Of a stretch of 64,000 nt of DNA, positions 11,276 through 51,600 are shown piece after piece. The DNA comes from Mustelus asterias (lineage: Eukaryota). Where the stretch lies: positions 3,534,001 through 3,598,000 of the forward strand of contig NC_135808.1 of assembly GCF_964213995.1 (NCBI RefSeq). Reading direction: 5' to 3'. The number at the start of each line of letters is the position of its first letter. Position 1 is the stretch's first letter. The translations under genes were made by a program, and so were the position numbers. The notes under the pieces are model-generated. The model searched no databases, was not told where the DNA came from, and worked only from the letters and a program-made list of their open reading frames with translations.

Positions 11276-13751
11276 AGTGGTTATCTGTTCTCCAACAGTG
11301 CACAGACACAGAAATCAAGTTACAGAATACTAATTAGAATGCAAATCTCTACAGCCAGCCAGGTCTTAAAAGGTACAGATAATGTGGTTGGAGGGAACAT
11401 TAAACACAGGTTAAAGAGATGTGTATTGTCTCCAGACAGAACAGCTGGTGAGATTATGCAAGACCAGGGGCAAGCTGTGGGGGTTACTGATAATGTGACA
11501 TAAATCCAACATCCCAGTTTAGGCCATCCTCATGTGTGCGGAACTTAGCTATCAGTTTCTGCTCAGCGACTCTGCGCTGTCGTGTGTCGTGAAGGCCGCC
11601 TTGGAGAACGCTTACCTGAAGATCCAAGGCTGAATGCCCGTGACTGCTGAAGTGCAAGACAGCACCGAACATCACCCAAGCACAACGCAACGCCATCCAC
11701 GCTCTCAAGACCAACCGCAACATTGTCATCAAACCAGCAGACAAAGGAGGGGCCATCGTCATACTGAACAGAACGGATTACTGCAAAGAAGTGTACCGAC
11801 AACTGAACAACGAGGAACACTACAGACAGTTACCCACAGATCCAACCAAAGATCACACCCGTCAACTCAACACTCTGATCAAAACCTTTGATCCGGACCT
11901 TCAGAGCACCCTCCGTGCTCTCATCCCACGTACTCCACGCGTTGGAGATCTCTACTGCCTCCCAAAAATACACAAGGCGAACACACCCGGCCGTCCCATC
12001 GTTTCAGGAAATGGAACCCTGTGCGAGAACCTGTCCAGCTATGTCGAGGGCATCTTGAAACCCATTGTACAAAGAACCCCCAGCTTTTGTCGCGACACTA
12101 CGGACTTCCTACAGAAACTCAACACACATGGAGCAGTTGAACCAGGAGCACTCCTCGTCACAATGGATGTCTCGGCACTCTACACCAGCATCCCCCACGA
12201 TGATGGCATTGCTGCAACGGCCTCAGTACTCAATGCCGTCAACTGCCAGTTTCCAGATGCAATTTTACAACTCATCCGCTTCATCCTGGACCACAATATC
12301 TCCACCTTCAACAACCAGTTCTTCATCCAGACACACGGAACAGCCATGGGGACAAAATTCGCACCTCAATATGCCAACATCTTCATGCACAGGTTCGAAC
12401 AAGACTTCTTCACCGCACAGGACCTTCAACCGATGTTTTATACACTAGATACATTGATGACATTTTCTTCCTTTGGAGTCATGGTGAGCAATCACTGAAA
12501 CAACTATATGATGACATCAACAAGTTCCATCCCACCATCAGACTCACCATGGACTACTCTCCGGAATCGGTTGCATTCTTGGACACACGCATCCCCATTA
12601 AGGACGGTCGCCTCAAGACCTCACTATACCGCAAGCCCACGGATAACCTCTTGATGCTCCACTTCTCCAGCTTCCACCCTAAACACGTAAAAGAAGCCAT
12701 CCCCTACAGACAAGCCCTCCGAATACACAGGAACTGCTCAGATGAGGAGGATCGCAACAGACACCTCCAGACGCTGAAAGATGCCCTCATAAGAACAGGA
12801 TATGGCGCTCGACTCATCGATCAACAGTTCCGACGCGCCACAGCGAAAAACCGCACCGACCTCCTCAGAAGACAAACACGGGACACGGTGGACAGAGTAC
12901 CCTTCATCGTCCAGTACTTCCCTGGAGTGGAGAAGCTATGGCATCTCCTCCGGAGCCTTCAACATGTCATTGATGAAGACGAACATCTCGCCAAGGCCAT
13001 CCCCACACCCCCACTTCTTGCCTTCAAACAACCACACAACCTCAAACAGACCATTGTCCGCAGCAAACTACCCAGCCTTCAGGAGAACAGTGACCATGAC
13101 ACCACACAACCCTGCCACAGCAACCTCTGCAAGACGTGCCGGATCATCGACACGGATGCCATCATCTCACGTGAGAACACCATCTACCAGGTACACGGTA
13201 CATACTCTTGCAACTCGGCCAACGTTGTCTACCTGATACGCTGCAGGAAAGGATGTCCCGAGGCATGGTACATTGGGGAAACCATGCAGACACTACGACA
13301 ACGGATGAATGAACACCGCTCGACAATCACCAGGCAAGACTGTTCTCTTCCTGTGGGGGAGCACTTCAGCAGTCACGGGCATTCAGCCTTGGATCTTCAG
13401 GTAAGCGTTCTCCAAGGCGGCCTTCACAACACACGTCAGCGCAGAGTCGCTGAGCAGAAACTGATAGCCAAGTTCCGCACACATGAGGATGGCCTAAACT
13501 GGGATGTTGGATTTATGTCACATTATCAGTAACCCCCACAGCTCGCCACAGCTTTCCCCCTGATCTTGCATAATATCACTAGCTGTTCTGTCTGGAGACA
13601 ATACACATCTCTTTAACCTGTGTTTAATGTTCCCTCCACCCACATTATCTGTACCTTTTAAGACCTGGCTGGCTGTAGAGATTTGCATTCTAATTAGTAT
13701 TCTGTAACTTGATTTCTGTGTCTGTGTACTGTTGGAGAACAGATAACTACT

Positions 13752-22099: not shown

Positions 22100-24780
22100 T
22101 CACGCACCCTCCCTCCCTCATCCTCCCCATCTGCATCCCACCACCACCCCCCCCCGCCCTCCTTCTCCCCACCCATCTCCCCTCTTCAAACTGCCTCCCC
22201 TACGCTCCCTGCCTCTCTTCCACTCCCTCCCATCTCTGACTCTTCCTCCCTCACTTTCTCCCTTCCTCCCTCCCCCATCCTTCCTCACTCTGTCCCCTCC
22301 TGTTCTCTCTCCAACCCTTACTCGCTTTCTCTATCTCTCCGCCTCCCTTCCTCTCTCCGCCTCCATCCTCCTCCTTCCCTCTCTCCCATCTCACTCCTGA
22401 TCCTCTCTCTCTCCCCCTCCCTTCCTGCCTCTCCCTCTCCTCTCTCCCCTCCTGCGCTCTGCCTCCCCCTCACATCCCAACTCCCTCTTGCTCAGTCCTC
22501 TGTCCCCTCTCCCTCCCTCATCTTCTCTCACCCCTCCACCCTCGCCCCCTCTTTCACCCTCCCTTCTCTCTCCCACCCTCTCGCGCCCCTCTCTATCTGC
22601 ATCCCTCACCCTCACTTGCTCCCCCTCTCTCCCTCACTTCCCTCCTCTCCTCCTCCTCTTTCTCCCATCGCCTCGCCCCTCACTTCCGCTTTCATCCGCT
22701 CCCCTCCTTCCTACCTCTTCCCCCTGCTCCAACCCGTGACCTACCTCCCTGCCTCCCTTCTCTCAACCTCTCCCTCTGTCCTTCTCTCCGTCCCCCTCCA
22801 TCCTTCCTTTCCTTCTGTCTTGCTACCTCTTCCCGCCTGCACTCTCCCCCTCCCTCACCCTCGCTCGCCCATTATCCCTAACCCTCCCTCCCCCCCACCT
22901 CTGCCTCCCTAACCACTCCCTCTCTTCTCCCTCCCGTCTCTCCCCTTCCCTCTCTCTTGCTCCCACACCCTCCCTCCTCTCCTCCACTCCCTATCTCCCT
23001 CTCTCTCCCGTTCCATCCCCTACACTCCGTTGCTCCATAACTTTCTCCTCCCTCCCTCTCCCCCTCTTTCCTCCCCCTCCCTCTCTACCACCATCCTCCC
23101 TCTTTCCCTCGCTCCCTCTCTCTACCCCCTCCCTCTCTCTCTCTCCCTCCCTGCTCCCTCCTACTCCCCTCCTCACCTCCACTCCACTCCCCTCCTTTCT
23201 TCTCCTCCCTCCCTCTCTCATCCTCTCTCTCTCCCCGTCCATCTCTCACTCCATCCCTCCCACCTTCTCCCTCATTCTCCCCTCCCTCTCTGCCCCCCCT
23301 CTCCCTGCCTCCCTTACCATCCGTCACCCTCACTCCCTCTCGGCATCTTCCTCCCCCTCTCTACCTCCGCCTCCTTCATTCCCTCCCTCTCTCTCACTCA
23401 CTCCCTCTCTCTCACTCACTTCCCACTTTCTCCCACCCTCTCTCTTGCTGCCCTCTCTCTCATTCCCTCCCTCACCCTCACTCATTCCCTCTCCCTCCCT
23501 CCCTCCCCTGCTTCTGTCTCTCTATCCTCCCCTTCCTTCTCTCCCCCCCCCTCTCCCCCTCCCTCCTTCTATTACCCCTGCTCCAACCTTCCTTCTCTTT
23601 CCCCGTCTCTGCTCCCTCTCTTTCCCACCCTCTATCCCTCCTTCCCATAATCCCTTATCCTCTCTCCCCCTCCCACCCTCTATCTCCTCTTCCGTCTCTC
23701 ACTCCCTCCACTCTCTCCCTTTCTTCCTCCCCTTCTTCCCTCTCTCCCTCACCCTCTCCTATCTCCCTCACTCGCCATCTCCCATCATCCTTCACCCTCC
23801 TAGGCCCCTCTCCCTTCCTCCCCTCTTGCCCCACCTTCTCTGTCCCCACTCTATCCCACCCTCTCTCTTGCCCTCTCTATCTGACTCCTGCCCTCTCTCT
23901 CACTCACTCTCTTCCCCTCACTCTCCATCTCCATGACATCTCCTTCAATCCCCCTCCCTCCTTTCTCCACCCTCCCCTGCTCCAACCTACCCCTCACTCC
24001 CTCCTCCATCCTGCTCACAACCTCCCTCCCTCTTGCCTCCATCCCTCACTCCGTCCCTCCATACAGCTGTTGCCCTCCTCCCTCTCTGCCTTCCCCCCCC
24101 TCCCCCCGTCTGCCTCTCCCCCTCCCTCCCTCCCCATCTCCCTTTCCCATCCCTTCCCCCTCCCTCCCCTCCCTCCTATCTCTCCCTCTGCCCCCTTCTC
24201 CTCCCCTCTCTCGCTCCCCCTCCCTCCCCCACTTCCCCGCCCCCACTGATCTTCTTCCCACGTCTCCTGCTCTCTCTCCCCAACTCCCTCTCCCTCCTCC
24301 GTCTACCTACCCCTCATCTCCCTCCCCCCATCTCCCCCTCCCTTCCGCCATTCACCCCTCCCTTCCATCTTTCCCCTCCCTCCCCCTTTCCCCCCCCCCG
24401 TCCCTTCCGCCATTCACCCCTCCCTTCTATCTTTCCCCTCCCTCCCCCTTTCCCCCCCCCTCCTCCCTCTCTCCACCCTCCCTTCCCTCTCCTTCCCCCT
24501 CCTTCTCTTCCCTCCCTCCCGGGCCTCTTTCCACCCCCGGCCCGCTCCACTCCCCTCCCCTCCCCCATCCCCTCTTCTCCACCCACCCACTAGCCCTCTC
24601 CTCTTCTCCCCTCCCCCACCCCGGCCCGACCCTCTTTTCTCTCCCCCTCCCCCCACTTCCCAGCCCTCTTTCCCCCCTCCGTCCTCTCTTTCCCTCCCTC
24701 CTCCCGGCCCTCTCATTCCCTCTCCTCCCGGCCCTGTCCTCTTCCGCCCTCCCACCCCTTCACTGCCTCCCAGTGAATCT
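22100..24780. repeat. About 2.7 kb low-complexity C/T-rich polypyrimidine tract
   Basis: Almost purine-free + strand; the P/S/L-rich ORFs here are artefacts. Confidence 0.95.
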
Positions 24781-24809
24781 CTTTAATTCTCTGCTTCTAA
24801 TTCTCCCAG

Positions 24810-25340
24810 TCTCTGTGACCCTGGATGTGGAAACAGCAACTCCCTGCCTCGAGGTGTCAGAGGATCTGAAGAATTACACACTGGCCATGACTAAGAGGAG
24901 TCTCCCTGACACCTGGAAGAGGTTTACACACTGGCCCTGTGCGCTGGGATCAGAGGGATTCACATCGGAGAGACATTACTGGGAGGTGGAGGTGATGGTG
25001 AATTGGTGGTGGAGACTGGGAGTCGCCGCACTGTCTGTGGAAAGGAAGGACTAGGTCAGTCTGAGCCCAGAGACTGGATTCCGAACCATTGGGCAGATTA
25101 GAGATCAGTTTCATATTAACTTCTCTCCTCCATCCTCTCTCCCTGTCTGTCAGATCCTCAGGAAGGTGGGAGTTTATCTCAGTTGTGAGTCTGGGACAGT
25201 TTAATTTTACAACGCAGACACCAAGTCCCATCTCCACACCCTCAGTGGGAATAAATTCACCCAGAAACTTTATTCTTTCTTCTGAACTTGGAATGTAAAC
25301 CAGTGGCTGAAAATCTGCTCCGGTTCTGATCCGGATAAGA
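24810..25340 (+). pseudogene. B30.2/PRY-SPRY terminal exon (TRIM/BTN type), disrupted
   Basis: ctcccag| acceptor then VSVTLDVETATPCLEVSEDLK...LPDTWKRFTHWPCALGSEGFTSERHYWEVEV...WRLGVA; in-frame TAG at 25052 and downstream frameshifts. Confidence 0.88.
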
Positions 25341-25420: not shown

Positions 25421-26790
25421 GGTTTTTGATTTGATTTATTGTCACATGTATTAGTATACAGTGAAAAGTATTGTTTCTTGCACGGTATACAGACAAAACA
25501 TACCATTCATAGAGAAGGAAACGAGAGAATGCAGAATATAGTGTTACAGTCATAGCTAGGGTGTAGGAAAGTTCAACTTAATGCAAGTTAAGTCCATTTA
25601 AAAGTCTGACAGCAGCAGCGAAGACGCCATTCTTGAGTCAGTTGGTACGTGACCTCAGACTTTTGTATCTTTTTCTCAAAGGAAGAAGGTGGAAGAGAGA
25701 ATGTCCGGGCTGCGTAGAGTCCTTAATTATGCTGGCTGCTTTGCCGAGGCAGCGGGAAGTGTCAACAAAGTCAATGGATCGGAGGCTAGTTTGTGTGGTG
25801 GATTGGGCTACATTCACGACCTTTTGTAGTTCCTTGAGGTCTTGGGCAGAGCAGGAGCCATACCAAGCTGTGATACAACCAGAAGGAATGCTTTCTATGG
25901 TCCATCTGTAAAAGTGGGTGAGAGTCGTAGCTGACATGCCAAATTTCCTTAGTCTTCTGAGAAAGTAGAGGCATTGGTGGACTTTCTTAACTATAGTGTC
26001 GGCATGGGAGGACCAGGACAGGTTGTTGGTGATCTGGATGCCTAAAAACTTGAAGCTCTCGACCCTTTCTACTTCATCCCCATTGATGTAGACGATGACA
26101 AAATCTCCTTTGTTTTGTTGACATTGAGGGAGAGATTATTGTTGCCGGCCAAGTCCACCCGATTCTCTATCTCATTCCTGTACTCTGTCTTGTCATTGTT
26201 CGAGATCCGACCCACTACAGTGGTGTCGTCAGCAAACTTGAAAATACAATTGGAGGGGAATTTTGCTGCACAGTCATAGGTGTACAAGGAGTATAGTAGG
26301 GGGCTGAGAACACAGCCTTGTGGGGCACCGGTGTTGAGAATTATCGTGGAGGTGTTGTTGCCTATCCTTACTGATTGTGGTCTGTGAGTTAGGAAGTCCA
26401 GGATCTAGTTGCAGAGTGAGGTGCCGAGGCCCAGGCCTCAGAGTTTGGAGATGAGTTTTATGGGAATAATAGTGTTGAAGGCTGAGATGTAGTCAATAAA
26501 TAGGAGTCTGACATAGGTGTCCTTGTTATCTAGGTGTTCCAGGGTTGCGTACAGGGCCAGGGAGATGGCATCTGCTGTGGACCTGTTACAGCGAAAGGCA
26601 AACTGCAGTGGATCCAGGTAGTACGGGAGGCTAGAATTGATTCGTGCCATGACTAGCCTTTCGAAGTACTTCATATTGATGGATGCCAGAGCCACCGGCC
26701 GATAGTCATTCAGGCACGTTGCTTGGTTTTTTCTTAGGTACCGGGATGATGGTCGTCTTCTTGAAACAGGGACCTCAGATTGTTGTAAAG
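25421..26790 (-). mobile_element. Rex1/Babar-like LINE, 5'-truncated
   Basis: [30 protein letters not shown]; FKFADDTT; (atcaa)n tail adjoining the B30.2 flank. Confidence 0.88.
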
Positions 26791-26974
26791 AGTGTTATAA
26801 AGTTGGTGGTCAGAAACCACCATTGACAACAGGTTGTTATTAAATGTGTATTTAATTTCCAAATTGTAAAATCCCAATCAGACTGGAAATAAAAACAATA
26901 CAAATAGAAATGTCAGAGGATTCAAATATAAAGTAAATTGAATATCTTGTGTCTCTCCTTCCTTCATTTTAGAA

Positions 26975-28924: not shown

Positions 28925-30590
28925 GGTGACACAGGAAATCTAGCCCCAGGAGTACGGCAGCGCAGAGTTGTGGCAGCACGAGGAGCTTGAAATTTTTGTA
29001 CACTGTGCCCCGTGGACATCCACCGAGTGGGACTTTGAAGCCATGGAGATCATTTGCTTTACTGGCAGTACTGAAAGGGCGTAGCGACTCACTGTGTTCG
29101 GGTGAATAAAGCTTTCCATACTCCCACAGTCAAATAAACAGTTTGTAGTGCGACCGTTTATCTCGATGTCCATCATGGACCTGGCGAGTTGGTGAGGCCT
29201 GGATTGGTCCAGCATAACCGAGGCCGCCGTTGGATTTTGCGATGCGGCTGAGGGCGTCCAAGATGGCGGCCCGCACGGTTCACACGCGGTTGATGGTGTC
29301 CAAGATGGCGGCACGCATGCGGCTCAGGGCGTCCAAGATGGCAGCCCCCGCGGGTTGCATGCGGCGCTTCTGGGCTTGGAGGTCGATTTCGCCCTGCATA
29401 CCTTCACGTAATGGCCCTTCTTTCCACACCCGGAGCAGATCGCATCCTTCACCAGGTAGCGTTGTCGGGGGTGGTTCCCCAGGCCGCAGAAGTAGCACTC
29501 CGGGCCTCCGGAGTCTGCCGCTGCGGTCGGGTCATTGGTGGGACGTGGCATTGCGTAGGCCTGCGGCCCTCCCGAGTACAGAGGTGGCGGCGACCGCGGT
29601 GTCCACGATGTGCCCCCATGGTCGGGGGTGTAGGCTGAGATTACGGAAGGCCACCTGTAACGAGTCGGCAAGCGCCACAGTCTTTTGTAGGTCCAGCCCA
29701 CCCAGTTCCAGCAGTCGTTGTCGGATATAGTTTGACCTGATACCCGTGACATAGGCATCTCTGATTAAGTCCTCAGTGTTTTGGGCGGCTGTTACGGCCT
29801 TGCAGTTGCAGGCCCTGCCAAGTTCTCGCAACGCACGCAGGAATTGATCGCCCGATTCTCCTGGCTGTTGTCTGCGAGTAGCCAGAAGATATCTGGCGTA
29901 GATTTCATTAGACTGTTTGTTGTACTGGCCTTTTAAAAGTTCGATCGCATTCTTGTAAGTTTCATCGTCCCTAATCATCGAGAATACTTAATTGCTTACC
30001 CGGGCATGGAGCACGTGTAGCTTGTCGGTTTCGGTCCGGACAATAGAGGCGGAGGCGGTGAGGAAAGTTTTGAAACATCGCAGCCAGTGATCAAAGCTGT
30101 TCGAGGCTCCTACGGCTTGAGGATCCAATTCGAGTCTATCGGGTTTTAGTATCTGCTCCATCCCAAAACCTTTTTGCTAATAACATTGATACACTATCAA
30201 TCAAGCAAAGACTAGTTTGTATGCAAGAACAAATAGGCTTTTATTAGCAAAAGACTTGGAGCACACCCATGCCAATGAACTGGTCCCGAGACTGAGGCAG
30301 GGGGTGGGGAGCAGTCACCTTTATACCTGGACCAGGGGGGGGAGGAGTCCCAGGCAGGGCCAGCAGGGGCATGTCCAGGCATGTCACACATACACAGGCA
30401 ATAAGCTAACAGTGGTTTACCACATTCACCCCCTGCTTTTAAAAAAAGAGTCCGGCGGGGGTGAGGTGGGTGGAACGATATTTACAGAATTACAAATTTA
30501 GATTCCCTGGGGGCTTGATCTGCCGCTGCGACCGCCGTAGTGCTGGTTGTGGAGTCGGTTCTGGTGGCCGCGGTGTTGGTTCAGGCGCCA
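28925..30590 (-). mobile_element. Gypsy (Mag-like) LTR retrotransposon remnant: integrase end and PPT, LTR (30187-30424), gag-protease
   Basis: LRRSQRQIKPP end, purine tract aaaagcagggggtgaa, LTR tgtggtaaacc..gtgtatca, gag from ATG 30161 (MEQILKPDRLELDPQ; in-frame stop), tandem zinc knuckles (CSGCGKKGHYVKVC), protease LFDCGS. Confidence 0.88.
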
Positions 30591-39175: not shown

Positions 39176-40395
39176 CTCTCCGACCTCCTCAGAAGACAAA
39201 CATGGGACACAGTGGACAGAGTACCCTTCATCGTCCAGTACTTGTTAAAGAAGCCATCCCCTATGGACAAGCCCTCCGTATACACAGGATCTGCTCAGAT
39301 GAGAAGGATCGCAACAGACACCTCCAGACGCTGAAAGATGCCCTCATAAGAACAGGATATGGCGCTCAACTCATCGATCGATAGTTCCGATGCGCCACAG
39401 CGAAAAACCGCACCGACCTCCTCAGAAGACAAACACAGGAGATGGCGGACAGAGTACCCTTCGTTGTCCAGTAATTCCCTGGAGCGGAGAAGCTACGGCA
39501 TCTCCTCCGGAGCCTTCAACATGTCATTGATGAAGACGAGCATCTCGCCAAGACCATTCCCACAACCCCACTTCTTGCCTTCGAACAGCCGCACAACCTC
39601 AAACAGACCATTGTCTGCAGCAAACTACCCAGCCTGCAGGAGAACAGTGACTACGACACTATACAACACTGCCACAGCAACCTCTGCAAGACGTGCCGGA
39701 TCATCGACACAGATGCCATCATCTCACGTGAGAACACCATCTACCAGGTACACAGTGCCTACTCTTGCAACTCGGCCCATGTTGTCTACCTGATACGCTG
39801 CAGGAAAGGATGTCCCAAGGCATGGTACATTGGGGAAACCATGCAGATGCTACGACAACGGATGAATGAACACCACTCGACAATCACCAGGCAAGACTGT
39901 TCTCTTCCTGTGGGGGGGAGCACTTCAGCGGTCACGGGCATTCAGCCTCTGATCTTCAGGTAAGCGTTCTCCAAGGCAGCCCTCACGGCACACGACAGCG
40001 CAGAGTCGCTGAGCAGAAACTGATAGCCAAGTTCCGCACACATGAGGACGGCCTAAACCGGGATGTTGGGTTTATGTCACACTATCAGTAACCCCCACAG
40101 CTTGCCTCCTGGACTTGCAGAATCTCACTGGCTGTCCTGTCTGGAGACAATACACATCTCTTTAACCTGTGCTTAATGCTCCCTCCACTCAGATTGTCTG
40201 TATCTTTAAGACCTGGTTGGTTGTAGAGATTCGCATTCTAATCAGTATTCTGTAACTTGATTTTGTGTCTTTGTGCACTGTTTGAGAGCACATTTCCACT
40301 CCATCTGACAAAGGAGCAGCGCTCCGAAAGCTTATGATATTTGCTACCAAATAAACCTGTTGGACTTTGACCTGGTGTTGTTAAAACTCTTACTG
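39176..40395 (+). mobile_element. Penelope-like 3' part (rearranged, with stops)
   Basis: EAIPYGQALRIHRICSDE; GIY-YIG region; terminus with a mutated hammerhead core (ctgacaa). Confidence 0.9.
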
Positions 40396-40397
40396 TG

Positions 40398-42110
40398 ATT
40401 ACTACATCTCTCCAGGATCTGTTTCCCTATCTGCTCCTCAACATCCCTGTTACTATTGGGCGGCCTGTAGAAAACACCCAGCAAAGTTATCAACCCCTTC
40501 CCGCTCCGAACTTCCACCCACAGAGACTCCGTAGATAATCCCTCCACGGCTTCCACCTGCTCTACAGCTGTGACACTATCACTGATCAGCAGTGCTACTC
40601 CCCCCCACCCCTCTTTTGCCTCCCTCTCTGTCCTTTCTGAAACATCTGAAACCCGGCACCTTAAGTATTCCGCCTTGTCCCTGTCCCCAAGTCTCCATAA
40701 TGGCCACCACATCACACTTCCAAGCATCGATCCACACTCTAAGCTCATCCACTTTATTCACTACACTCCTGGCGTTAAAATAGACACATCTCAAACCTTT
40801 GGTCTGAGCTCTCCCCTTCTCCATCACCCGTCTATTCTCCCTCTTACACTGTCTACAATCCTTCTCTATTTGCAGGCTAACCTCCTCACTCTCAGTCCTC
40901 TCATCTCGATTCCCTCCCCCCAACATTTCTAGTTTAAAGTCTCCCCAGTGGCCTTAGCCAACCTTCCTGCCAGGATATTGGTCCCCCTGGGATTCAAGTG
41001 CCACCCGTCTTTTTTGTACAGGTCACACCTGCCCCGAAAGAGGTCCCAATGATCCAGGAACCTGAATCCCTGGCCCCCGCTCCAGTCCCTCAGCCACGCA
41101 TTCATCCTCCACCTCACTCCATTCCTGCTCTCACTTTCCCGTGGTACAGGCAGCAATCCTGAGATTACTACCTTTGCGTTCCTCCTTCCCAACTGTCTAC
41201 CTAACTCCCTATATTCTCTTTTCATGACCCCTTTCCTCTTCCTACCTATGTCAGCGGTACCAATGTGTACCACGACCTCTGGCTCCTCTCTCTCCCACCT
41301 CAGGATATCTGGGACACGATCAGAGACATCCCGGATCCCGGCACCAGGCAGGCAGATCACCATCTGAGACTCCCGTCTGCCTCCGCAAAAACGCCTGTCC
41401 GATCCCCTTACTGTTGAGTCCCCGATTAATACTGCCTTCCTCCCCCTTTCCTTAGCCCTCTGAGTTACAGGGCCGGACTCTGCTCCAGAGACACGGCCAC
41501 TGCTGCTTCCCCCAGGTGGGCTGTCCCCCCCAGCAGTACTCAGACAGGAGTACTTATTGTGAAGGGGCACATCCACTGGGGTGCTCTTTATCACCCGAGA
41601 TTTCCCCTTCCTGGATGTTACCCACTTGTCTGCCTCCCGTGCTTCTCGGCCTTTTGGCTAAGATCAAGTGTAGTTATGCGGATGCTGCACTTGGTTGAGG
41701 TCATTAGGTTACATTGAAGCTTCATATGTTTCATATGAAGCAATTTTTAAAAGCGGAATCTCGGCCTTTTGGCTAAGATGCAAATGAGCTCAAGTCTTGG
41801 AGGAGGAATTGCTTTCCCTCCTCCAATCAGCTTGGCTCATGTAGATCAGGCCCAGGACAGGGCAAATGGTCGCTTGCCCTGTCTTGCCAGCCTGGATCGG
41901 AAATGTCTCAACTTGTTGAGACTCTGAATTGGACTTGATTTGATTGAATTGGAAAAGTATTTTAAAAAAACTTGTCTGCCTCCCGTGGCCCTGGTGTGAC
42001 CACCTGCTGATAGCTCCTGTCTATCACCTCCTCATTTTCCCTAACCAGACGAAGATCCTCGAGCTGCAGTTCCAGTTCTCTAACATGGTCCCTTAGGAAC
42101 CGCAGCTCGA
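40398..42110 (-). mobile_element. CR1 5' part (ORF1 esterase and ORF2 start)
   Basis: GDSTVRG..HIGTAD..DGWHLN; YFNARSVVNK. Confidence 0.92.
41641..41970 (+). mobile_element. U2 snRNA-headed SINE-like element (copy 1)
   Basis: U2 nt 4-37 (gcttctcggccttttggctaagatcaagtgtagt), second U2 segment at 41759-41779, hairpin-rich body, A-tail, TSD cttgtctgcctcccgtg (41625-41641 / 41971-41987); inserted in CR1 ORF1. Confidence 0.88.
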
Positions 42111-43574
42111 CAGATATGGATTAAAGAAAGGATATTATTAAACTGGAAAGAGTGCAGAAAAGATTTACTAGGATGCTACCGGGACTTGATGGTTTGAGTT
42201 ATAAGGAGGGGCTGGATTGACTGGGACATTTTTCTCTGGACCATAGGAAGCTTAGGGGTGATCTTATAGAGGTCTATAAAATAATGAGGAGCATAGCCAA
42301 CTCGATAGTCAATATCTTTTCCCAAAGATAGGGGAGTCTAAAACTAGAGGGCATAGGTTTAAAGTGAGAGGGGAGAGATACAAAAGGGTCCAGAGAGGCA
42401 ATTTTTTCACAGAAGGTGGTGAGTGTCTGGAACAAGCTGCCAGAGGCAGTAGTAGAGGCAGGTACAATTTTGTCTTTTAAAAAACGTTTAGACAGTTACA
42501 TGAGAAAAATGGGTATAGAGGGATATGGGCCCGACATGGGCAACTGGGACTAGCTTAGTGGTTAAAAAAAGAGGTGGCATGGACAAGTTGGACCGAAGGG
42601 CCAGTTTCCATGTTGTAAACCTCTATCACTCTAATTAGTGATGAGCAAGAAATACTGGTCTAGCCAACGAGGACCATACTCCATCAAAGAAGAAACAAAA
42701 AATAGGTGTCCATCAATACCCATATGCTACAGCTGCAACACATCATCTGTCCTGCCATCTATGTTGTGTTATATTTACGTAGTTAGATTTCAAATTTAAT
42801 ATCACTCAATGATTGAGTGTGGTTAGACACAAGTTTCAAGGAGGTGGTCACACCTCCAGACAGGTAGATGGGTGACCGCCAGGAGAGGTAGGCAGATAAT
42901 GCAGGAGTCTCCTGTGGCTATCCCCCTCTCAAACAGGTATACCCTTTTGGATACTGTTGGGGGGACCTGTACAAGAAGGACGGGTTACACCTGAACTGGA
43001 GGGGCACCAATATCCTGGGTGGGAGTGCTGTTCGGGAGGGTTTAAACTAGTTTGATGGGGGGTGGGCACCGGAACAGCAGGCCAGTTGTTGTAGGGACTG
43101 GAGAAGAAAGTGAGACTGAGATAAACATAGCGCAGAGCAAGGGCAGGCAGAGGGAAGCCACGGGGCTCAGCAGGACTGGAGTGCATTTGCTTCAATGCAA
43201 GAAGTAATACAGGTAAAACAGATTAACTGAGAGCCTGGATTACTGCATGGAATTATGATGTTATTGCAATTACGGAGGCATAGTTAAAGAAGGGACAGGA
43301 CTGGCAGCTGAACATTCTGGGATATCGCTGTTTTAGATGGGACAGAAAGGGAAACAAAAGGGGTGAGGGAGCACATCTCATCTGTGTTGAGGGAAGACAT
43401 ATTGGAGGGATCTTGTAGTGAGGCATTAGGGGTGGAGCTCAGGAATAGGAAGGGTGAGATCACAATGTTGGGACTGTATTATAGATCTCCCAACAGTCTG
43501 CAGGAGACAGAGGAGCAGTTGTGTATTCAGATACTGAAAAGGTGTGAAAAAAGCAGGGTAGATGTGGTGGGTAA

Positions 43575-43879: not shown

Positions 43880-44085
43880 GGTAACTTTAACTTCCCCCAT
43901 ATTGACTGGGAATCCCTTAGAGCCAGGGGCTCGGATGGAGAGCAATTAATTAAATGTGTCTGGGAGGACTTTTTGATACAGTATGTTGACAATCAACTAG
44001 GGAGGGGGCCATACTAGACTTAGCCTTAGGGAATGAGCTGGGCCAGGTGATCAATGGGGGAGCATTTTGGGCTTAGCAACTATAA

Positions 44086-47149: not shown

Positions 47150-48125
47150 TGTGGTGAACCATAGATGGTTACCACAATGGGTACTTGTACATATGTTACT
47201 CTTGTTACTGTTGGGGTTAGGGTTGGGGTGTGTAAGGAATAATCATTAAGACAACATATATTGGAAGGAATAATTATTAGGACAAGTAGGGGATAATAAT
47301 TGACACAGAAGAAATAATCACTACCTAAGAAGTTCTCATATATCATCACATATCTTATTAAGCACTTGTACCCTTTTAAGTGCACGAAACCTTACCAGGC
47401 CAGTACACATAGATACTCACATGAATGAACATGAAGGCTAAAAGAAGTCAAGCAAACACACAGAAGCTGACAGTAATTTCCTAAAACCTAAGAAACGCAC
47501 ATCTTTTAAAAAGTCTTGGCACAGTAGGATGCTCCACAATGGTTGAACAAACAACAACCTTGGCTGATTAGATAATAAACTTCAGATAGGAAGGCAAGAT
47601 GGAACCACAATGATATCATAGCACATTCATTAGTGACCAATCAGAGAAAAGGCAGATAACGTAGGTCTAGTAAACCATGGTGGCTAACGAAAAGTGGCCT
47701 TGGGGTCTGTAAGAAAAGCCTTGACTGTAAGATAAGAAAGATGAGGTATGAGGCTAAAATGTGTATAAAAATGCTGTAAGCGCGCTGGTTCTTTGGATTC
47801 ATCCGGAAATCCCGGCTTTGTTGACTTGTATGAGCTAATAAAGCCTTGCTGCCTGGAAGATCAAGACTCAGACTCTCTATTCAGATTGACGAACTCTTCT
47901 TGCCGTCCACGGGGAACCACGGCAGGTGTTCCACCTGTTATTATTGTTTATGTGGTACACTCCGTTCGGCTCCGCCTTCTTACTGGAGTAGAAAGGTCAC
48001 TGCTACTTCCTAGTAGCCCTTAGTCTGGGATAATATTGTTAAGTAGTGTGCTCCAATCTTGTTGTGAATAAAAGCCTTTATTCTCGGGTACGTCCTAGCC
48101 TCCCGTGTGAATCAATCGCGCATCA
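47150..48125 (+). mobile_element. Solo LTR of the 305-bp family (TSD gggtt) containing a nested second LTR
   Basis: tgtggtgaaccata..cgcgcatca; TSD 47145-47149 / 48126-48130. Confidence 0.9.
47231..47924 (+). mobile_element. 694-bp solo LTR (ERV- or Gypsy-like), 4-bp TSD ggtg
   Basis: TGTAAG...GGCA ends, tataaaa at about 47764, aataaa at about 47837; TSD 47227-47230 / 47925-47928. Confidence 0.82.
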
Positions 48126-48129
48126 GGGT

Positions 48130-48415
48130 TTTTTTTGTTTATATCCAATCAAAGTCTCAATAAGTGAGACATTACAGATCCAAGCTGACAAGACAGGTTG
48201 GCCGTTTCCTGTCTTGGGCTTGATCTGCATTATCCAAGCTGATAGGAGCAGGCATTGCACCTCCAAGGCATGATCTCATTTGAATCTTAGCCAAAAGGTC
48301 TAGATGCTGCTTTAAAAAATTGCTTCAAATAAAGCCTCAGTGTAACCTTATGACTTCAACCAAGTGCAGGATGCCAAAACTACACTTGATTTTAGCCAAA
48401 AGGCCAAGAAGCGAT
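48130..48415 (-). mobile_element. U2 snRNA-headed SINE-like element (copy 2, diverged)
   Basis: Reverse strand starts at U2 nt 1 (atcgcttcttggccttttggctaaaatcaagtgtagt), has the same body order and second U2 segment, and ends in an A-rich tail. Confidence 0.85.
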
Positions 48416-48679: not shown

Positions 48680-51600
48680 GTAAGGAATATTAACATTTAT
48701 TTAAGTAATGATACAGTTCCACCTTCACAGCAAAATTGTATGTCTAATTAAGTTCTCTGCTGTTACAGAATTTAGTTGTTTGGTCAGTAGGCTTACTTTG
48801 GAAAAGCAGATAAGTCTCAGACTGCACATTGAAAAGGCAGTTCAGCAACAAGCTGCAACTTAAAATTCTTGTGCTTTAAATGTGTTATAATCACCCCTCA
48901 CTAACACCACCCATTTTACTTCTGTCACATCGCCTGACCTCCCCCGTCTCTGCAGTTGTTTCTGTACAGAATCTAAACCACCATTTGTCAAACAATGAAA
49001 CTTAGTTGTTGCTCCGACATTCCTCATTTCAACTCCGTGCCTATCGTTTTCTGGCAGACTGAGGAGTGGGGTGCTTTGACTCAAAGCTAACACTGGAATC
49101 AGACTTTCAAAAGGAGAGTCAGAAGAAAAAGCCAGACAGACAGCAAGGCCTGCTCTATAAGGGATGTTTCTGATTTATGTTAACACGGTGCAGTCATTTA
49201 TGTATTCAGTGATCATACAGACATAAGTTGCATCAAAGCAACTTAAGTGATTACTATTCTATTAGTTATTATTCTATATGTTTGCCTTACTCTGAGACAA
49301 AAGCAGATAAAATCACTCAACTCGTGTTGGCTTGGTTTGATGTGGTAAGAAGTTTAACAACACCAGGTTAAAGTCCAACAGGTTTATTTGGTAGCAAAAG
49401 CCACACAAGCTTTCGGAGCTCTAAGCCCCTTCTTCAGGTGAGTGGGAATTCTGTTCACAAACAGAGCTTATAAAGACACAGACTCAATTTACATGAATAA
49501 TGGTTGGAATGCGAATACTTACAACTAATCAAGTCTTTAAGAAACAAAACAATGTGAGTGGAGAGAGCATCAAGACAGGCTAAAAAGATGTGTATTGTCT
49601 CCAGACAAGACAGCCAGTGAAACTCTGCAGGTCCACGCAACTGTGGGAGTTACAAATAGTGTGACATGAACCCAATATCCCGGTTGAGGCCGTCCTCGTG
49701 TGTGGGGAACTTGGCTATCAGTTTCTGCTCAGCGACTCTGCGCTGTCATGTGTCGCAAAGGCCGCCTTGGAGAACGCTTACCCGAATATCAGAGGCCGAA
49801 TGCCCGTGACCACTGAAGTGCTCCCCAACAGGAAGAGAACAATCTTGCCTGGTGATTGTCGAGCGGTGTTCATTCATCCGTTGTCGCAGCGTCTGCATAG
49901 TTTCCCCAATGTACCATGCCTCGGGACATCCTTTCTTGCAGCGTATCAGGTAGACAACGTTGGCCGAATTGCAAGAGTATGTACCGTGTACCTGGTGGAT
50001 GGTGTTCTCACGTGAGATGATGGCATCTGTGTCGATGATCCGGCACGTCTTGCAGAGGTTGCTGTGGCAGGGTTGTGTGGTGTCATGGTCACTGTTCTCC
50101 TGAAGGCTGGGTAGTTTGCTGTGGACAATGGTCTGTTTGAGGTTGTGCGGTTGTTTGAAGGCAAGAAGTGGGGGTGTGGGGATGGCCTTGATGAGATGTT
50201 CGTCTTCATCAATGACATGTTGAAGGCTCCGGAGGAGATGCCGTAGCTTCTCCGCTCCGGGGAAGTACTGGACAACGAAGGGTACTCTGTCCACTGTGTC
50301 CCGTGTTTGTCTTCTGAGGAGGTCGGTGCGGTTTTTCGCTGTGGCGCGTTGGAACTGTTGATCAATGAGTCGAGCGCCATATCCTGTTCTTATGAGGGCA
50401 TCTTTCAGCGTCTGGAGGTGTCTGTTGCGATCCTCCTCATCCGAGCAGATCCTGTGTATACGGAGGGCTTGTCCATAGGGGATGGCTTCTTTAACGTGTT
50501 TAGGGTGGAAGCTGGAGAAGTGGAGCATCGTGAGGTTATCCGTGGGCTTGCGGTACAGTGAGGTGCTGAGGTGACCGTCCTTAATGGAGATGCGTGTGTC
50601 CAAGAATGCAACCGATTCCGGAGAGTAGTCTATGGTGAGCCTGATGGTGGGATGGAACTTGTTGATGTCATCATAGAGTTGTTTCAGTGATTGTTCACCA
50701 TGAGTCCAAAGGAAGAAAATGTCATCGATGTATCTAGTGTATAGCATCGGTTGAAGGTCCCGTGCGGTGAAGAAGTCTTGTTCGAACCTGTGCATGAAGA
50801 TGTTGGCATATTGAGGTGCGGATTTGGTCCCCATGGCTGTTCCGTGTGTCTGGATGAAGAACTGGTTGTTGAAGGTGAAGATATTGTGGTCCAGGATGAA
50901 GCGGATGAGATGTAAAATTGCATCTGGAAACTGGCAGTTGTTGGTGAACTGTTGGGAGAACAGTGACCATGACACCACACAACCCTGCCACAGCAACCTC
51001 TGCAAGACATGCCGGATCATCGACACAGATGCCATCATCTCACGTGAGAACACCATCCACCAGGTACACGGTACATACTCTTGCAATTCGGCCAATGTTG
51101 TCTACCTGATACGCTGCAAGAAAGGATGTCCCGAGGCATGGTACATTGGGGAAACTATGCAGACGCTGCGACAACGGATGAATGAACACCGCTCGACAAT
51201 CACCAGGCAAGACTGTTCTCTTCCTGTTGGGGAGCACTTCAGTGGTCACGGGCATTCGGCCTCTGATATTCGGGTAAGCGTTCTCCAAGGCGGCCTTCGC
51301 GACACATGACAGCGCAGAGTCACTGAGCAGAAACTGATAGCCAAGTTCCGCACACACGAGGATGGCCTCAACCGGGATATTGGGTTCATGTCACACTATT
51401 TGTAACTCCCACAGTTGCGTGGACCTGCAGAGTTTCACTGGCTGTCTTGTCTGGAGAGAATACACATCTTTTTAGCCTGTCTTGATGCTCTCTCCACTCA
51501 CATTGTTTTGTTTCTTAAAGACTTGATTAGTTGTAAGTATTCGCATTCCAACCATTATTCATGTAAATTGAGTCTGTGTCTTTATAAGCTCTGTTTGTGA

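What the first reader, a model, noticed from the sequence alone, without database searches (positions are those of the whole stretch)
41641..41970. U2 snRNA-headed SINE family with a doubled U2 head (candidate new SINEU-type element outside crocodilians)
Seen: a 330-bp insert in CR1 ORF1 with a 16-17 bp TSD and an A-tail. It begins with U2 nt 4-37, has a second U2 segment (about nt 7-27) at 41759, and then a non-U2 body. An independent, diverged copy with the same layout lies on - at 48130-48415 and starts exactly at U2 nt 1. Two colinear copies argue for a family rather than a one-off truncated U2 pseudogene. Known: snRNA-headed SINEs (SINEU) were described in crocodilians; a long TSD plus A-tail is the L1/Tx1 signature; U2 has no internal promoter, so a source locus would need an external snRNA promoter. 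Inference: a separate origin in cartilaginous fish. I cannot confirm it is absent from repeat libraries.
Basis: partly seen in the sequence, partly recalled or inferred. Interest (0 to 1): 0.85.

Follow-up and report, generated by a model that had tools for sequence, protein, structure and literature searches.

The report
U2-headed short retroposon family in shark
Two independent copies of a short, non-coding, poly(A)-tailed mobile element that carries the first 37 bases of the U2 spliceosomal RNA at its front (and a second U2 piece inside) sit in this shark-like window, a kind of element so far published only for crocodilians.

Summary
Copy A (41641-41970, +) is a 330-bp insert with an 18-nt flanking direct repeat (16 nt certain) and an A7 tail, inside the ORF1 region of a CR1 LINE. 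It starts at U2 position 4/5 and matches U2 through position 37 (Rfam U2, 48.4 bits, E 1.5e-6). A 21-nt exact second U2 piece (positions 7-27) lies at 41759-41779. Copy B (48415-48129, -) is colinear, starts at U2 position 1, is 83% identical (222 of 267 aligned bases) and has unrelated flanks. A looks young: perfect repeat, 6 CpG, fold z -6.6. B looks old: 1 CpG, no repeat found.

Best reading: a SINEU-like non-autonomous retroposon moved by a LINE through target-primed reverse transcription. The U2 piece is a leader, not a promoter. It ends within 1 nt of the published Keno/Utopia insertion site in U2 genes, which suggests passage through U2 genes. This is inferred, not shown.

The scan noted this family before on other DNA of this genome (63 unchecked first-reader notes). 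Eight paper searches found snRNA-headed SINEs only in crocodilians.

The parts
41624..41641 (.). Left copy of the target-site duplication of copy A (18 nt; outermost bases ambiguous, 16 nt certain)
   Evidence: Read directly; identical to 41970-41987.
41641..41674 (+). U2 head 1 of copy A: U2 snRNA positions 4(5)-37 (stem-loop I and most of the branch-point-pairing region)
   Evidence: Rfam RF00004 alignment: 34 of 34 bases agree with the consensus over model positions 4-37, with high posterior probability. The alignment then breaks.
41675..41758 (+). 84-nt spacer of unknown origin, with a 10-bp-stem hairpin (41719-41741) followed by a T5 run (41744-41748)
   Evidence: The Rfam E-value search of 41679-41758 gave chance-level matches only (best E 0.12). 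Conserved in copy B except for a 9-nt deletion in the hairpin.
41759..41779 (+). Second U2 piece (U2 positions 7-27), an exact 21-nt repeat of part of head 1
   Evidence: 21/21 identity, E 3e-5. Copy B has the matching piece at about 48307-48284 (87.5% over 24 nt).
41780..41925 (+). Non-U2 body rich in hairpins (stems at 41799-41824, 41847-41894 and 41905-41922)
   Evidence: Fold of 41679-41963: -111.7 kcal/mol, z -6.58, 0 of 200 shuffles as stable. In the consensus fold with copy B, 52 pairs: 46 unchanged, 4 changed on one side, 2 compensatory. No Rfam family (best E 0.15, below every gathering score).
41926..41970 (+). A/T-rich variable tail ending in A7 (41964-41970)
   Evidence: Copy B lacks about 25 nt of this tail and ends in A8, so the 3' end is not conserved.
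41970..41987 (.). Right copy of the target-site duplication of copy A
   Evidence: 18 of 18 identical to the left copy.
48129..48415 (-). Copy B: old full-length copy. Head = U2 positions 1-37 (48415-48379, 2 differences from A's head), spacer, second U2 piece (about 48307-48284), body, A8 tail (48136-48129)
   Evidence: 83% identical to A, K2P 0.19. It has 1 CpG against 6 in A; 5 of A's 6 CpG sites are not CpG in B. Fold z only -2.27.
40347..41623 (-). Host of copy A: degenerate CR1 LINE (ORF1 region with esterase domain, then ORF2 N-terminus); it continues at 41988-42120 on the far side of the insert
   Evidence: Pfam Lipase_GDSL_2 E 3.7e-12 on ORF 40929-41594. CR1 profile positions 4-140 map to 40347-40953. 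The frame runs through the empty-site junction.
47923..48125 (-). 5' terminus of an unrelated repeat abutting copy B's tail; it hides B's 3' flank
   Evidence: The same terminus (TGATGCGCGATT...) begins two other copies, near 43881 and 13939 (minus strand); those copies are 78% and 84% identical.

Best explanation
This is a family of short (about 290-330 bp), non-coding, poly(A)-tailed retroposons of the SINEU type in a cartilaginous-fish genome.

Layout: U2 snRNA positions 1-37, an 84-nt spacer, a second U2 piece (positions 7-27), a hairpin-rich body of about 150 nt, and a variable A-rich tail.

Shown:
- Two copies inserted independently and at different times. Copy A was inserted by target-primed reverse transcription (long target-site duplication plus A-tail).
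- The source RNA began at U2 position +1 (copy B).

Inferred:
- The element is moved in trans by an endonuclease-type LINE that primes on poly(A). A Tx1/Keno-lineage LINE is the most likely (about 0.55); L1 is the alternative.
- The U2 piece is a leader, not a promoter. U2 genes have no known internal promoter, and T4-T6 runs inside the element would stop RNA polymerase III.
- My preferred origin of the leader (about 0.45): a copy sitting in the Keno/Utopia target site of a U2 gene (U2 position 37/38) is transcribed from that gene's own upstream promoter. The transcript therefore starts at U2 +1 and carries exactly the U2 part upstream of the site. The inner, older U2 piece would mark an earlier round.
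- Dispersed copies such as A and B would be promoter-less dead ends.
For: - Head identity and boundary: Rfam U2 hit, with the alignment ending at model position 37.
- Keno/Utopia site: the Utopia paper, section 6 (PMC4640811), says U2 sequence downstream of Utopia insertions starts at nt 39 and that Keno's 3' flank is identical. PMC6136364 (passages) paraphrases Kojima and Fujiwara 2004: Keno inserts 37 nt downstream of the U2 start.
- Retroposition signature: 18-nt direct repeat and A7 tail; the CR1 frame is continuous through the empty site.
- Family rather than duplication: colinear copy B with unrelated flanks; 83% identity and CpG 6 against 1.
- Start at U2 +1 in copy B.
- Not a pol III unit: T runs of 4 or more at element positions 12, 104 and 127 in A, and 12, 34, 94 and 117 in B. 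Kojima uses the same argument for SINEU (PMC4494074, section 18).
- Precedent (PMC4494074, sections 9 and 18): recurrent 5' addition of U2 pieces, U2 heads on Tx1 LINEs of the clade that clusters with Keno, 16-bp TSDs, poly(A) tails.
- Target of copy A is not the L1 endonuclease type: the base before the duplication is C, not a T-run (read; the L1 consensus is recalled).
- Unchecked leads: 63 first-reader notes of U2-headed elements in this genome, and notes of a U2-headed Tx1 LINE.
Against: - Only two copies were seen by me. Copy number, 5'-start distribution and target preference genome-wide are unknown.
- No Tx1 LINE is in the window. All LINE reverse transcriptases found are CR1 or L2-like, alongside Penelope-like elements. 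No sequence sharing the spacer, body or tail was found.
- Both copies lie outside U2 genes, so a strictly U2-specific endonuclease cannot have placed them.
- If the same LINE makes 16-18-nt duplications, a copy in a U2 gene should carry U2 up to about position 55, not 37.
- The head ends 1 nt short of the 38|39 site given in PMC4640811.
- Kojima's detailed SINEU-2 data favour template switching with variable junctions.
- The spacer between the two U2 pieces is not explained by simple repeated passage through U2 genes.
Confidence: 0.7

Rival explanations
1. The element and its mobilisation are the same, but the U2 pieces were added by template switching. The LINE reverse transcriptase, on reaching the 5' end of the element's RNA, jumped onto mature U2 snRNA (or onto a U2-headed LINE RNA) and copied it to its 5' end. 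This happened twice in the family's history. Transcription of master copies then depends on whatever flanking promoter they landed near.
For: - This is Kojima's model for SINEU, backed by 26 SINEU-2 copies with variable U1 extensions and junction microhomology (PMC4494074, sections 9 and 18).
- It explains dispersed copies without any U2-gene specificity.
- A jump into a U2-headed LINE's 5' UTR would explain the spacer.
- The single-stranded branch-point region around U2 positions 33-38 is a plausible landing site (recalled knowledge).
Against: - The head ends within 1 nt of the Keno/Utopia site. Under this model that is a coincidence.
- snRNA chimeras made by L1 usually carry the snRNA up to its 3' end (recalled).
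- The model leaves the transcription of the family unexplained.
Confidence: 0.35
2. It is not a SINE in the strict sense. It is an internally deleted, non-autonomous derivative of a U2-headed Tx1 (Keno-like) LINE. Head 1 plus the spacer would be the LINE's 5' end, and the second U2 piece plus body plus tail its 3' UTR.
For: - Unchecked scan notes of a U2-headed Tx1 LINE, of an internally deleted U2-headed Tx1 element 22 kb beyond this window, and of a U2-containing poly(A) module at the 3' end of a Tx1 LINE.
- Crocodilian Tx1-11_Crp has a U2 head nearly identical to SINEU-1 heads.
- Kojima discusses such non-autonomous LINEs (Bov-A and others; section 21).
Against: - I saw no LINE sequence, so the shared ends are untested.
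- The element has no coding remnant: the longest stop-free stretch beside the head is 59 codons, and it has no protein match.
Confidence: 0.3
3. A classical pol III SINE. A cryptic internal promoter (an A-box-like motif in U2 stem-loop I and a B-box-like motif in the spacer) drives transcription, and an L1-type LINE mobilises it.
For: - By eye, the head and the spacer contain weak resemblances to box A and box B at tRNA-like spacing (recalled consensus, about 6-7 of 11 positions each; read).
- A long TSD and an A-tail also fit L1.
Against: - A T5 (A) or T6 (B) run at about element position 100, plus T4 runs, would terminate pol III before the body and tail.
- The box matches are at chance level.
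- Copy A's target does not look like an L1 endonuclease site.
Confidence: 0.07
4. Not a mobile family: either a local segmental duplication of one chimeric U2 retropseudogene, or a variant U2 gene.
For: Only two copies were seen, 6.5 kb apart. Rfam scores copy A just above the U2 gathering threshold.
Against: - The flanks are unrelated and the copies are in opposite orientation.
- Copy A has its own perfect TSD inside a CR1 frame.
- 17% divergence, while A's TSD is intact.
- Beyond position 37 the Rfam alignment has low posterior probability up to model position 129, and the body alone gives no U2 match.
- No Sm site or 3' box was seen.
- 63 unchecked notes of like elements elsewhere in the genome.
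Confidence: 0.02

Closest known systems
SINEU-1 of crocodilians (Kojima 2015, PMC4494074)
   Same: A short retroposon with a short U2-derived 5' head and further U-derived pieces stacked by recurrent 5' addition. The 3' half is non-U and of unknown origin. It has a poly(A) tail and internal oligo-T, no recognisable promoter, and TSDs of about 10-16 bp (sections 9 and 18).
   Different: The host is a shark-like genome. An 84-nt spacer separates the two U2 pieces. Homology of the body to SINEU-1 could not be tested, because there is no library and the figures and supplements are not held. No Mariner target was seen. Copy A looks recent, whereas SINEU-1 stopped moving more than 80 Ma ago.
SINEU-3 / SINEU-2 of crocodilians
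   Same: A U2 5' piece of similar length (32 bp in SINEU-3), a poly(A) tail, and presumed mobilisation by Tx1.
   Different: SINEU-3 is an internally deleted U2 made of two U2 fragments. SINEU-2 is U1 plus U2. Here most of the element is not U2: the body alone has no U2 match.
Keno (Tx1-clade LINE specific for U2 snRNA genes; Kojima and Fujiwara 2004, as cited in PMC4640811 and PMC6136364)
   Same: The U2 piece carried here ends at position 37, within 1 nt of Keno's insertion site in U2 genes. Keno occurs in fishes and frogs.
   Different: Keno is autonomous (APE plus RT) and sits in U2 genes. The copies here are non-coding and lie in a CR1 and beside other repeats. No Keno or Tx1 sequence was seen in the window.
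L1-made chimeric snRNA retropseudogenes (Buzdin 2002 and Garcia-Perez 2007, as cited in PMC4494074 section 18)
   Same: An snRNA 5' part fused to other sequence, with a TSD and a poly(A) tail.
   Different: Those are one-off events with differing junctions. Here two copies of different age share every internal junction.
Elements transcribed from a borrowed upstream promoter (R2 in 28S rDNA; the SVA-MAST2 subfamily; as discussed in PMC4494074 section 18)
   Same: The proposed dependence on the target gene's promoter, with a piece of the target carried as a 5' leader.
   Different: Here this is inferred only. No master copy or transcript was seen.

Membership tests
SINEU (Kojima 2015) | 5' region derived from a U1 or U2 snRNA gene | tested here: met
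   Rfam RF00004 hit of 48.4 bits, E 1.5e-6, with model positions 4-37 identical to the consensus. Copy B starts at U2 position 1.
SINEU (Kojima 2015) | Short (<500 bp) non-coding retroposon with a 3' poly(A) tail | tested here: met
   330 bp and 287 bp; A7 and A8 tails. The longest stop-free stretch beside the head is 59 codons, with no protein match.
SINEU (Kojima 2015) | A retrotransposition unit: many copies sharing the same internal structure, not a sum of independent chimeras | tested here: inconclusive
   2 of 2 copies in the window share all junctions and have unrelated flanks. A genome-wide count was impossible. The 63 scan notes are unchecked.
SINEU (Kojima 2015) | Insertion by LINE machinery (target-site duplication or truncation) | tested here: met
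   Copy A has an 18-nt direct repeat, 18 of 18 identical, and an empty-site frame that is continuous. No duplication was found for copy B.
SINEU (Kojima 2015) | No internal pol III promoter; oligo-T inside | tested here: met
   T4-T6 runs inside both copies. Box A/B likeness was judged by eye only.
SINEU (Kojima 2015) | Mobilised by Tx1-clade LINEs (shared target preference, shared U heads) | not testable with these tools
   No Tx1 in the window, and no access to the rest of the genome.
SINEU (Kojima 2015) | Sequence homology of the body to crocodilian SINEU-1/2/3 | not testable with these tools
   No Repbase or Dfam on hand. Fig. 1B and the supplements of PMC4494074 are not held.
Non-autonomous Keno/Tx1 derivative | Inserted in U2 snRNA genes at position 37/38 | tested here: not met
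   Copy A lies in a CR1 ORF1 region. Copy B lies between a LINE-like 3' end and another repeat. Neither 3' flank is U2.
Non-autonomous Keno/Tx1 derivative | 5' and 3' ends shared with an autonomous Tx1 LINE | not testable with these tools
   No Tx1 sequence was available to me. Scan notes s1-892310, s1-893722 and s1-893018 claim such LINEs but are unchecked.
U2 snRNA gene or plain U2 retropseudogene | U2 sequence and structure beyond the 5' end (stem-loops II-IV, Sm site) | tested here: not met
   After position 37 the Rfam alignment has deletions and low posterior probability up to about model position 129; the posterior is high again only over the terminal hairpin, model positions about 151-192. 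The body alone (41780-41970) gives no U2 match at E up to 10.
Classical pol III SINE (tRNA, 7SL or 5S head) | Head from a pol III gene with internal promoter | tested here: not met
   No tRNA found by ARAGORN beside the element. No tRNA, 5S or 7SL hit in Rfam.

The most novel reading that the evidence does not exclude
The U2 leaders are stamps of passage. The family would be a non-autonomous parasite of a U2-gene-targeting Tx1 (Keno-like) LINE whose master copies sit in the Keno site of U2 genes. They would borrow the U2 snRNA gene's upstream pol II promoter, so each round through a U2 gene adds a fresh U2 1-37 leader. That would give the first concrete answer to the open question of how snRNA-headed SINEs are transcribed. 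It would also show that this strategy arose in sharks as well as in crocodilians.
Probability: 0.3. Interest if true: 0.75.

Novelty: new member of a known kind. Interest (0 to 1): 0.5.

Why it matters
In the papers I could search, snRNA-headed SINEs are known only from crocodilians. Their author left open how they are transcribed, since U1 and U2 genes have no internal promoter.

A second lineage in cartilaginous fish matters for three reasons. It has at least one young-looking copy. Its head stops at the known insertion site of U2-targeting LINEs. And it makes the question testable: look for master copies in U2 gene arrays, map capped 5' ends, and pair the element with its Tx1 partner. It would also add a repeat class that shark genome annotations should mask and date.

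If the family is already in Repbase or Dfam, the finding is ordinary annotation.

Tried and rejected
Looking for more copies:
- Two pattern scans of metagenome contigs used conserved stretches of the spacer and the body. The first gave 0 hits. The second gave 4 hits, all chance: only the 21-23 nt of the pattern match, on contigs of 50-63% G+C.
- Two scans of viral contigs gave 0 hits.
- A protein search with the longest stop-free stretch of the body gave no candidate. I ran no further search on the other frame.

Looking for the partner LINE in the window:
- PDB comparison of two RT ORFs showed only moderate likeness to L1 ORF2p (E 1e-19 to 1e-24).
- All-against-all blastp and the best 120 of 7996 homologues say CR1.
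- A CR1 profile built from 8 of those 120 proteins was run against 824 six-frame pieces. It gave 54 domain rows. All are CR1 except one L2-like element at 25641-26794 on the minus strand.
- No Tx1 was found.

Origin of spacer and body: the Rfam E-value searches gave nothing credible.

TSD of copy B: not found within 18 kb.

Paralogous empty site for copy A at DNA level: none in the window. I used frame continuity instead.

tRNA neighbourhood hinted at by scan notes: there are no tRNA genes in the window.

Rejected readings: local duplication, a U2 variant gene, and a pol III SINE (see rivals). A weak likeness between copy A's target and the U2 target site (a shared 4-mer followed by pyrimidines, offset by 4-5 nt) was seen by eye. 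I do not count it as evidence.

Kojima and Fujiwara 2004 is not held, so Keno's own TSD and 5' junction are unknown to me. Figures and supplements of PMC4494074 and PMC4640811, which show the U2 head alignments and target sites, could not be seen. They may bear on the boundary argument and on homology with crocodilian SINEU.
Full report
OBSERVATION

Copy A (41641-41970, + strand):
- It is bracketed by an 18-nt direct repeat (41624-41641 = 41970-41987, 18 of 18 identical). The first base could belong to the A-tail and the last to the U2 head, so 16 nt are certain.
- It ends in A7.
- Rfam's U2 model (RF00004) matches 41638-41839 at 48.4 bits, just above the gathering score of 46, with E 1.5e-6. 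It was the only gathering-level hit in the 64-kb window.
- In that alignment, model positions 4-37 are matched base for base with high posterior probability, and then the alignment breaks.
- A 21-nt exact repeat of U2 positions 7-27 lies at 41759-41779 (E 3e-5).

Copy B (48415-48129, minus strand):
- It begins at U2 position 1 and follows the same order of parts.
- blastn gives 78% over 293 bp. On the alignment, 222 of 267 aligned bases are identical, with 20 transitions, 25 transversions, 23 gap columns and K2P 0.19.
- The flanks do not align and share nothing elsewhere.
- A profile of the two copies finds no third copy in the window.

ANATOMY

- Head 1: U2 positions 1-37 (copy A lacks the first 3-4).
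- Spacer: 84 nt, holding a 10-bp-stem hairpin and then a T5 (A) or T6 (B) run.
- A second U2 piece.
- Body: about 150 nt, made of hairpins.
- Tail: a poorly conserved A/T-rich stretch with a short A run.

Copy A beside the head folds far better than shuffles: -111.7 kcal/mol, z -6.58, 0 of 200 shuffles as stable. Copy B folds only a little better: z -2.27, 4 of 200. The consensus fold of the two has 52 pairs: 46 unchanged, 4 changed on one side and 2 compensatory. With two sequences this cannot prove a selected structure.

Neither the body nor the spacer matches any Rfam family. The body alone does not match U2, so only the 5' 37 nt and the inner 21 nt are clearly U2.

By eye, the inner piece may continue in degraded form to about U2 position 36. 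I give this little weight.

CONTEXT AND AGE

Copy A sits in the ORF1 region of a degenerate CR1 on the minus strand:
- The frame reads through the modelled empty site.
- An SGNH/GDSL esterase ORF follows (Pfam E 3.7e-12).
- The CR1 ORF2 N-terminus comes next.

Copy B's tail abuts the 5' terminus of another repeat whose terminus recurs twice in the window. That probably explains why no target-site duplication is found.

Copy A keeps 6 CpG and copy B keeps 1. Five of A's six CpG sites are not CpG in B. Together with A's intact duplication, this says A is young and B is old, so the family was active over a long time.

The window is packed with CR1 fragments: 54 profile rows from 824 six-frame pieces. 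It also holds Penelope-like ORFs and one L2-like RT. No Tx1 or L1-like RT was seen.

The CR1 RT's best named shark relatives are Chiloscyllium punctatum and Scyliorhinus torazame at 71% identity. This fits a cartilaginous fish, but no tool named the species (codes the organisms).

MECHANISM

Shown:
- Insertion of copy A by target-primed reverse transcription (long duplication, A-tail, clean empty site).
- Two independent insertions.
- A source RNA whose 5' end is U2 +1.

Inferred:
- The U2 piece is not a promoter. Kojima notes that no internal promoter is known for snRNA genes (PMC4494074, Introduction).
- The internal T-runs argue against pol III reading the whole element. This is the argument he uses for SINEU (section 18).

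The head stops at U2 position 37. The Utopia paper states that U2 sequence downstream of Utopia insertions starts at nt 39, and that Keno, the Tx1-clade U2-specific LINE of fishes and frogs, has the identical 3' flank (PMC4640811, section 6). PMC6136364 paraphrases Kojima and Fujiwara 2004 as Keno inserting 37 nt downstream of the U2 start.

So the head is, within 1 nt, the part of a U2 gene that lies upstream of a Keno-type insertion. My preferred reading (about 0.45) is that master copies sit in that site of U2 genes and are transcribed from the gene's own upstream promoter. The inner U2 piece would be the trace of an earlier round.

Points against this reading:
- Both copies here lie outside U2 genes.
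- A LINE that makes 16-18-nt duplications should leave U2 up to about position 55 upstream.
- The 84-nt spacer needs an extra event.
- Kojima's own data on SINEU-2 favour template switching.

Template switching onto U2 RNA (about 0.35) is therefore a serious rival.

The partner LINE is most likely of the Tx1 clade. The grounds are the precedent of SINEU and Tx1-Mar, U2 heads on crocodilian Tx1 LINEs, 16-bp duplications there, and a non-L1-like target here. I saw no such LINE myself.

COMPARISON WITH THE KNOWN

The element meets the structural definition of SINEU: an snRNA-derived head, short length, a poly(A) tail, a LINE-type insertion, internal oligo-T and stacked U pieces. I could not test:
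- homology with crocodilian SINEU bodies;
- Tx1 mobilisation;
- copy number.

It is not a Keno-type site-specific insertion at these two loci. It is not a plain U2 pseudogene, and it is not a pol III SINE (see the membership table).

NOVELTY

Eight searches found SINEU only in Kojima 2015 and in papers that cite it. [quoted passage not shown] No listed paper describes a U2-headed SINE in cartilaginous fish.

This does not cover Repbase Reports, Dfam or subscription journals.

The scan itself has flagged the family many times on other DNA of this genome. 63 first-reader notes hold the words U2, snRNA and head. They include dimeric-head copies of 331-353 letters, and 11 notes mention Tx1 LINEs, one of them U2-headed. 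All are unchecked AI notes. I use them as leads only.

LIMITS

There is therefore no copy-number, cross-species or RNA evidence.
- From then on I worked beside that stretch.
- The collections that can be scanned hold no copy.

VERDICT

This is a real SINEU-like retroposon family, and most likely a new member of a known kind. Interest is moderate. It would be higher if the link to U2 genes holds.

Noticed in passing
window 48125 (minus), 43881 (minus), 13939 (minus): Three copies of an unnamed repeat begin at the same terminus (TGATGCGCGATT...). The copies near 43881 and 13939 are 78% and 84% identical to the one that abuts copy B's tail. This could be an LTR or another element's 5' end.
   Followed up: partly
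window 12549-13532 (+) and 49746-51095 (-): Two ORFs 93% identical over 295 aa, with RVT_1 and weak GIY-YIG matches. They are Penelope-like retroelements.
   Followed up: partly
window 25641-26794 (-): A broken reverse transcriptase only distantly like the CR1 profile (E 1e-5 to 1e-13). Its motifs look L2-like to me (recalled), so it is a LINE clade distinct from the CR1 copies that fill the window.
   Followed up: partly
window 23933-25054 (+): An ORF with a PRY (SPRY-associated) domain, E 5.5e-16. It is probably an exon of a TRIM or butyrophilin-like gene; another scan note nearby says the same.
   Followed up: no
window 28943-29987 (-): Stop-free stretches with a zinc-knuckle-like motif and a protease-like segment, which suggests a gag-pol remnant of an LTR retroelement.
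   Followed up: no
proteins P0016 and P0028: CR1-type reverse transcriptases 68% and 75% identical to this window's CR1 are filed in NCBI under Carnobacterium maltaromaticum and Klebsiella pneumoniae, on 1.6-3 kb contigs. This is probably fish or shark DNA contaminating bacterial assemblies.
   Followed up: no
window 41799-41824: Rfam aligned this hairpin to U2 stem-loop IV with high posterior probability, and its loop shares a short motif with that loop. The body alone gave no U2 match, and copy B has a 6-nt deletion there. It is probably chance.
   Followed up: partly
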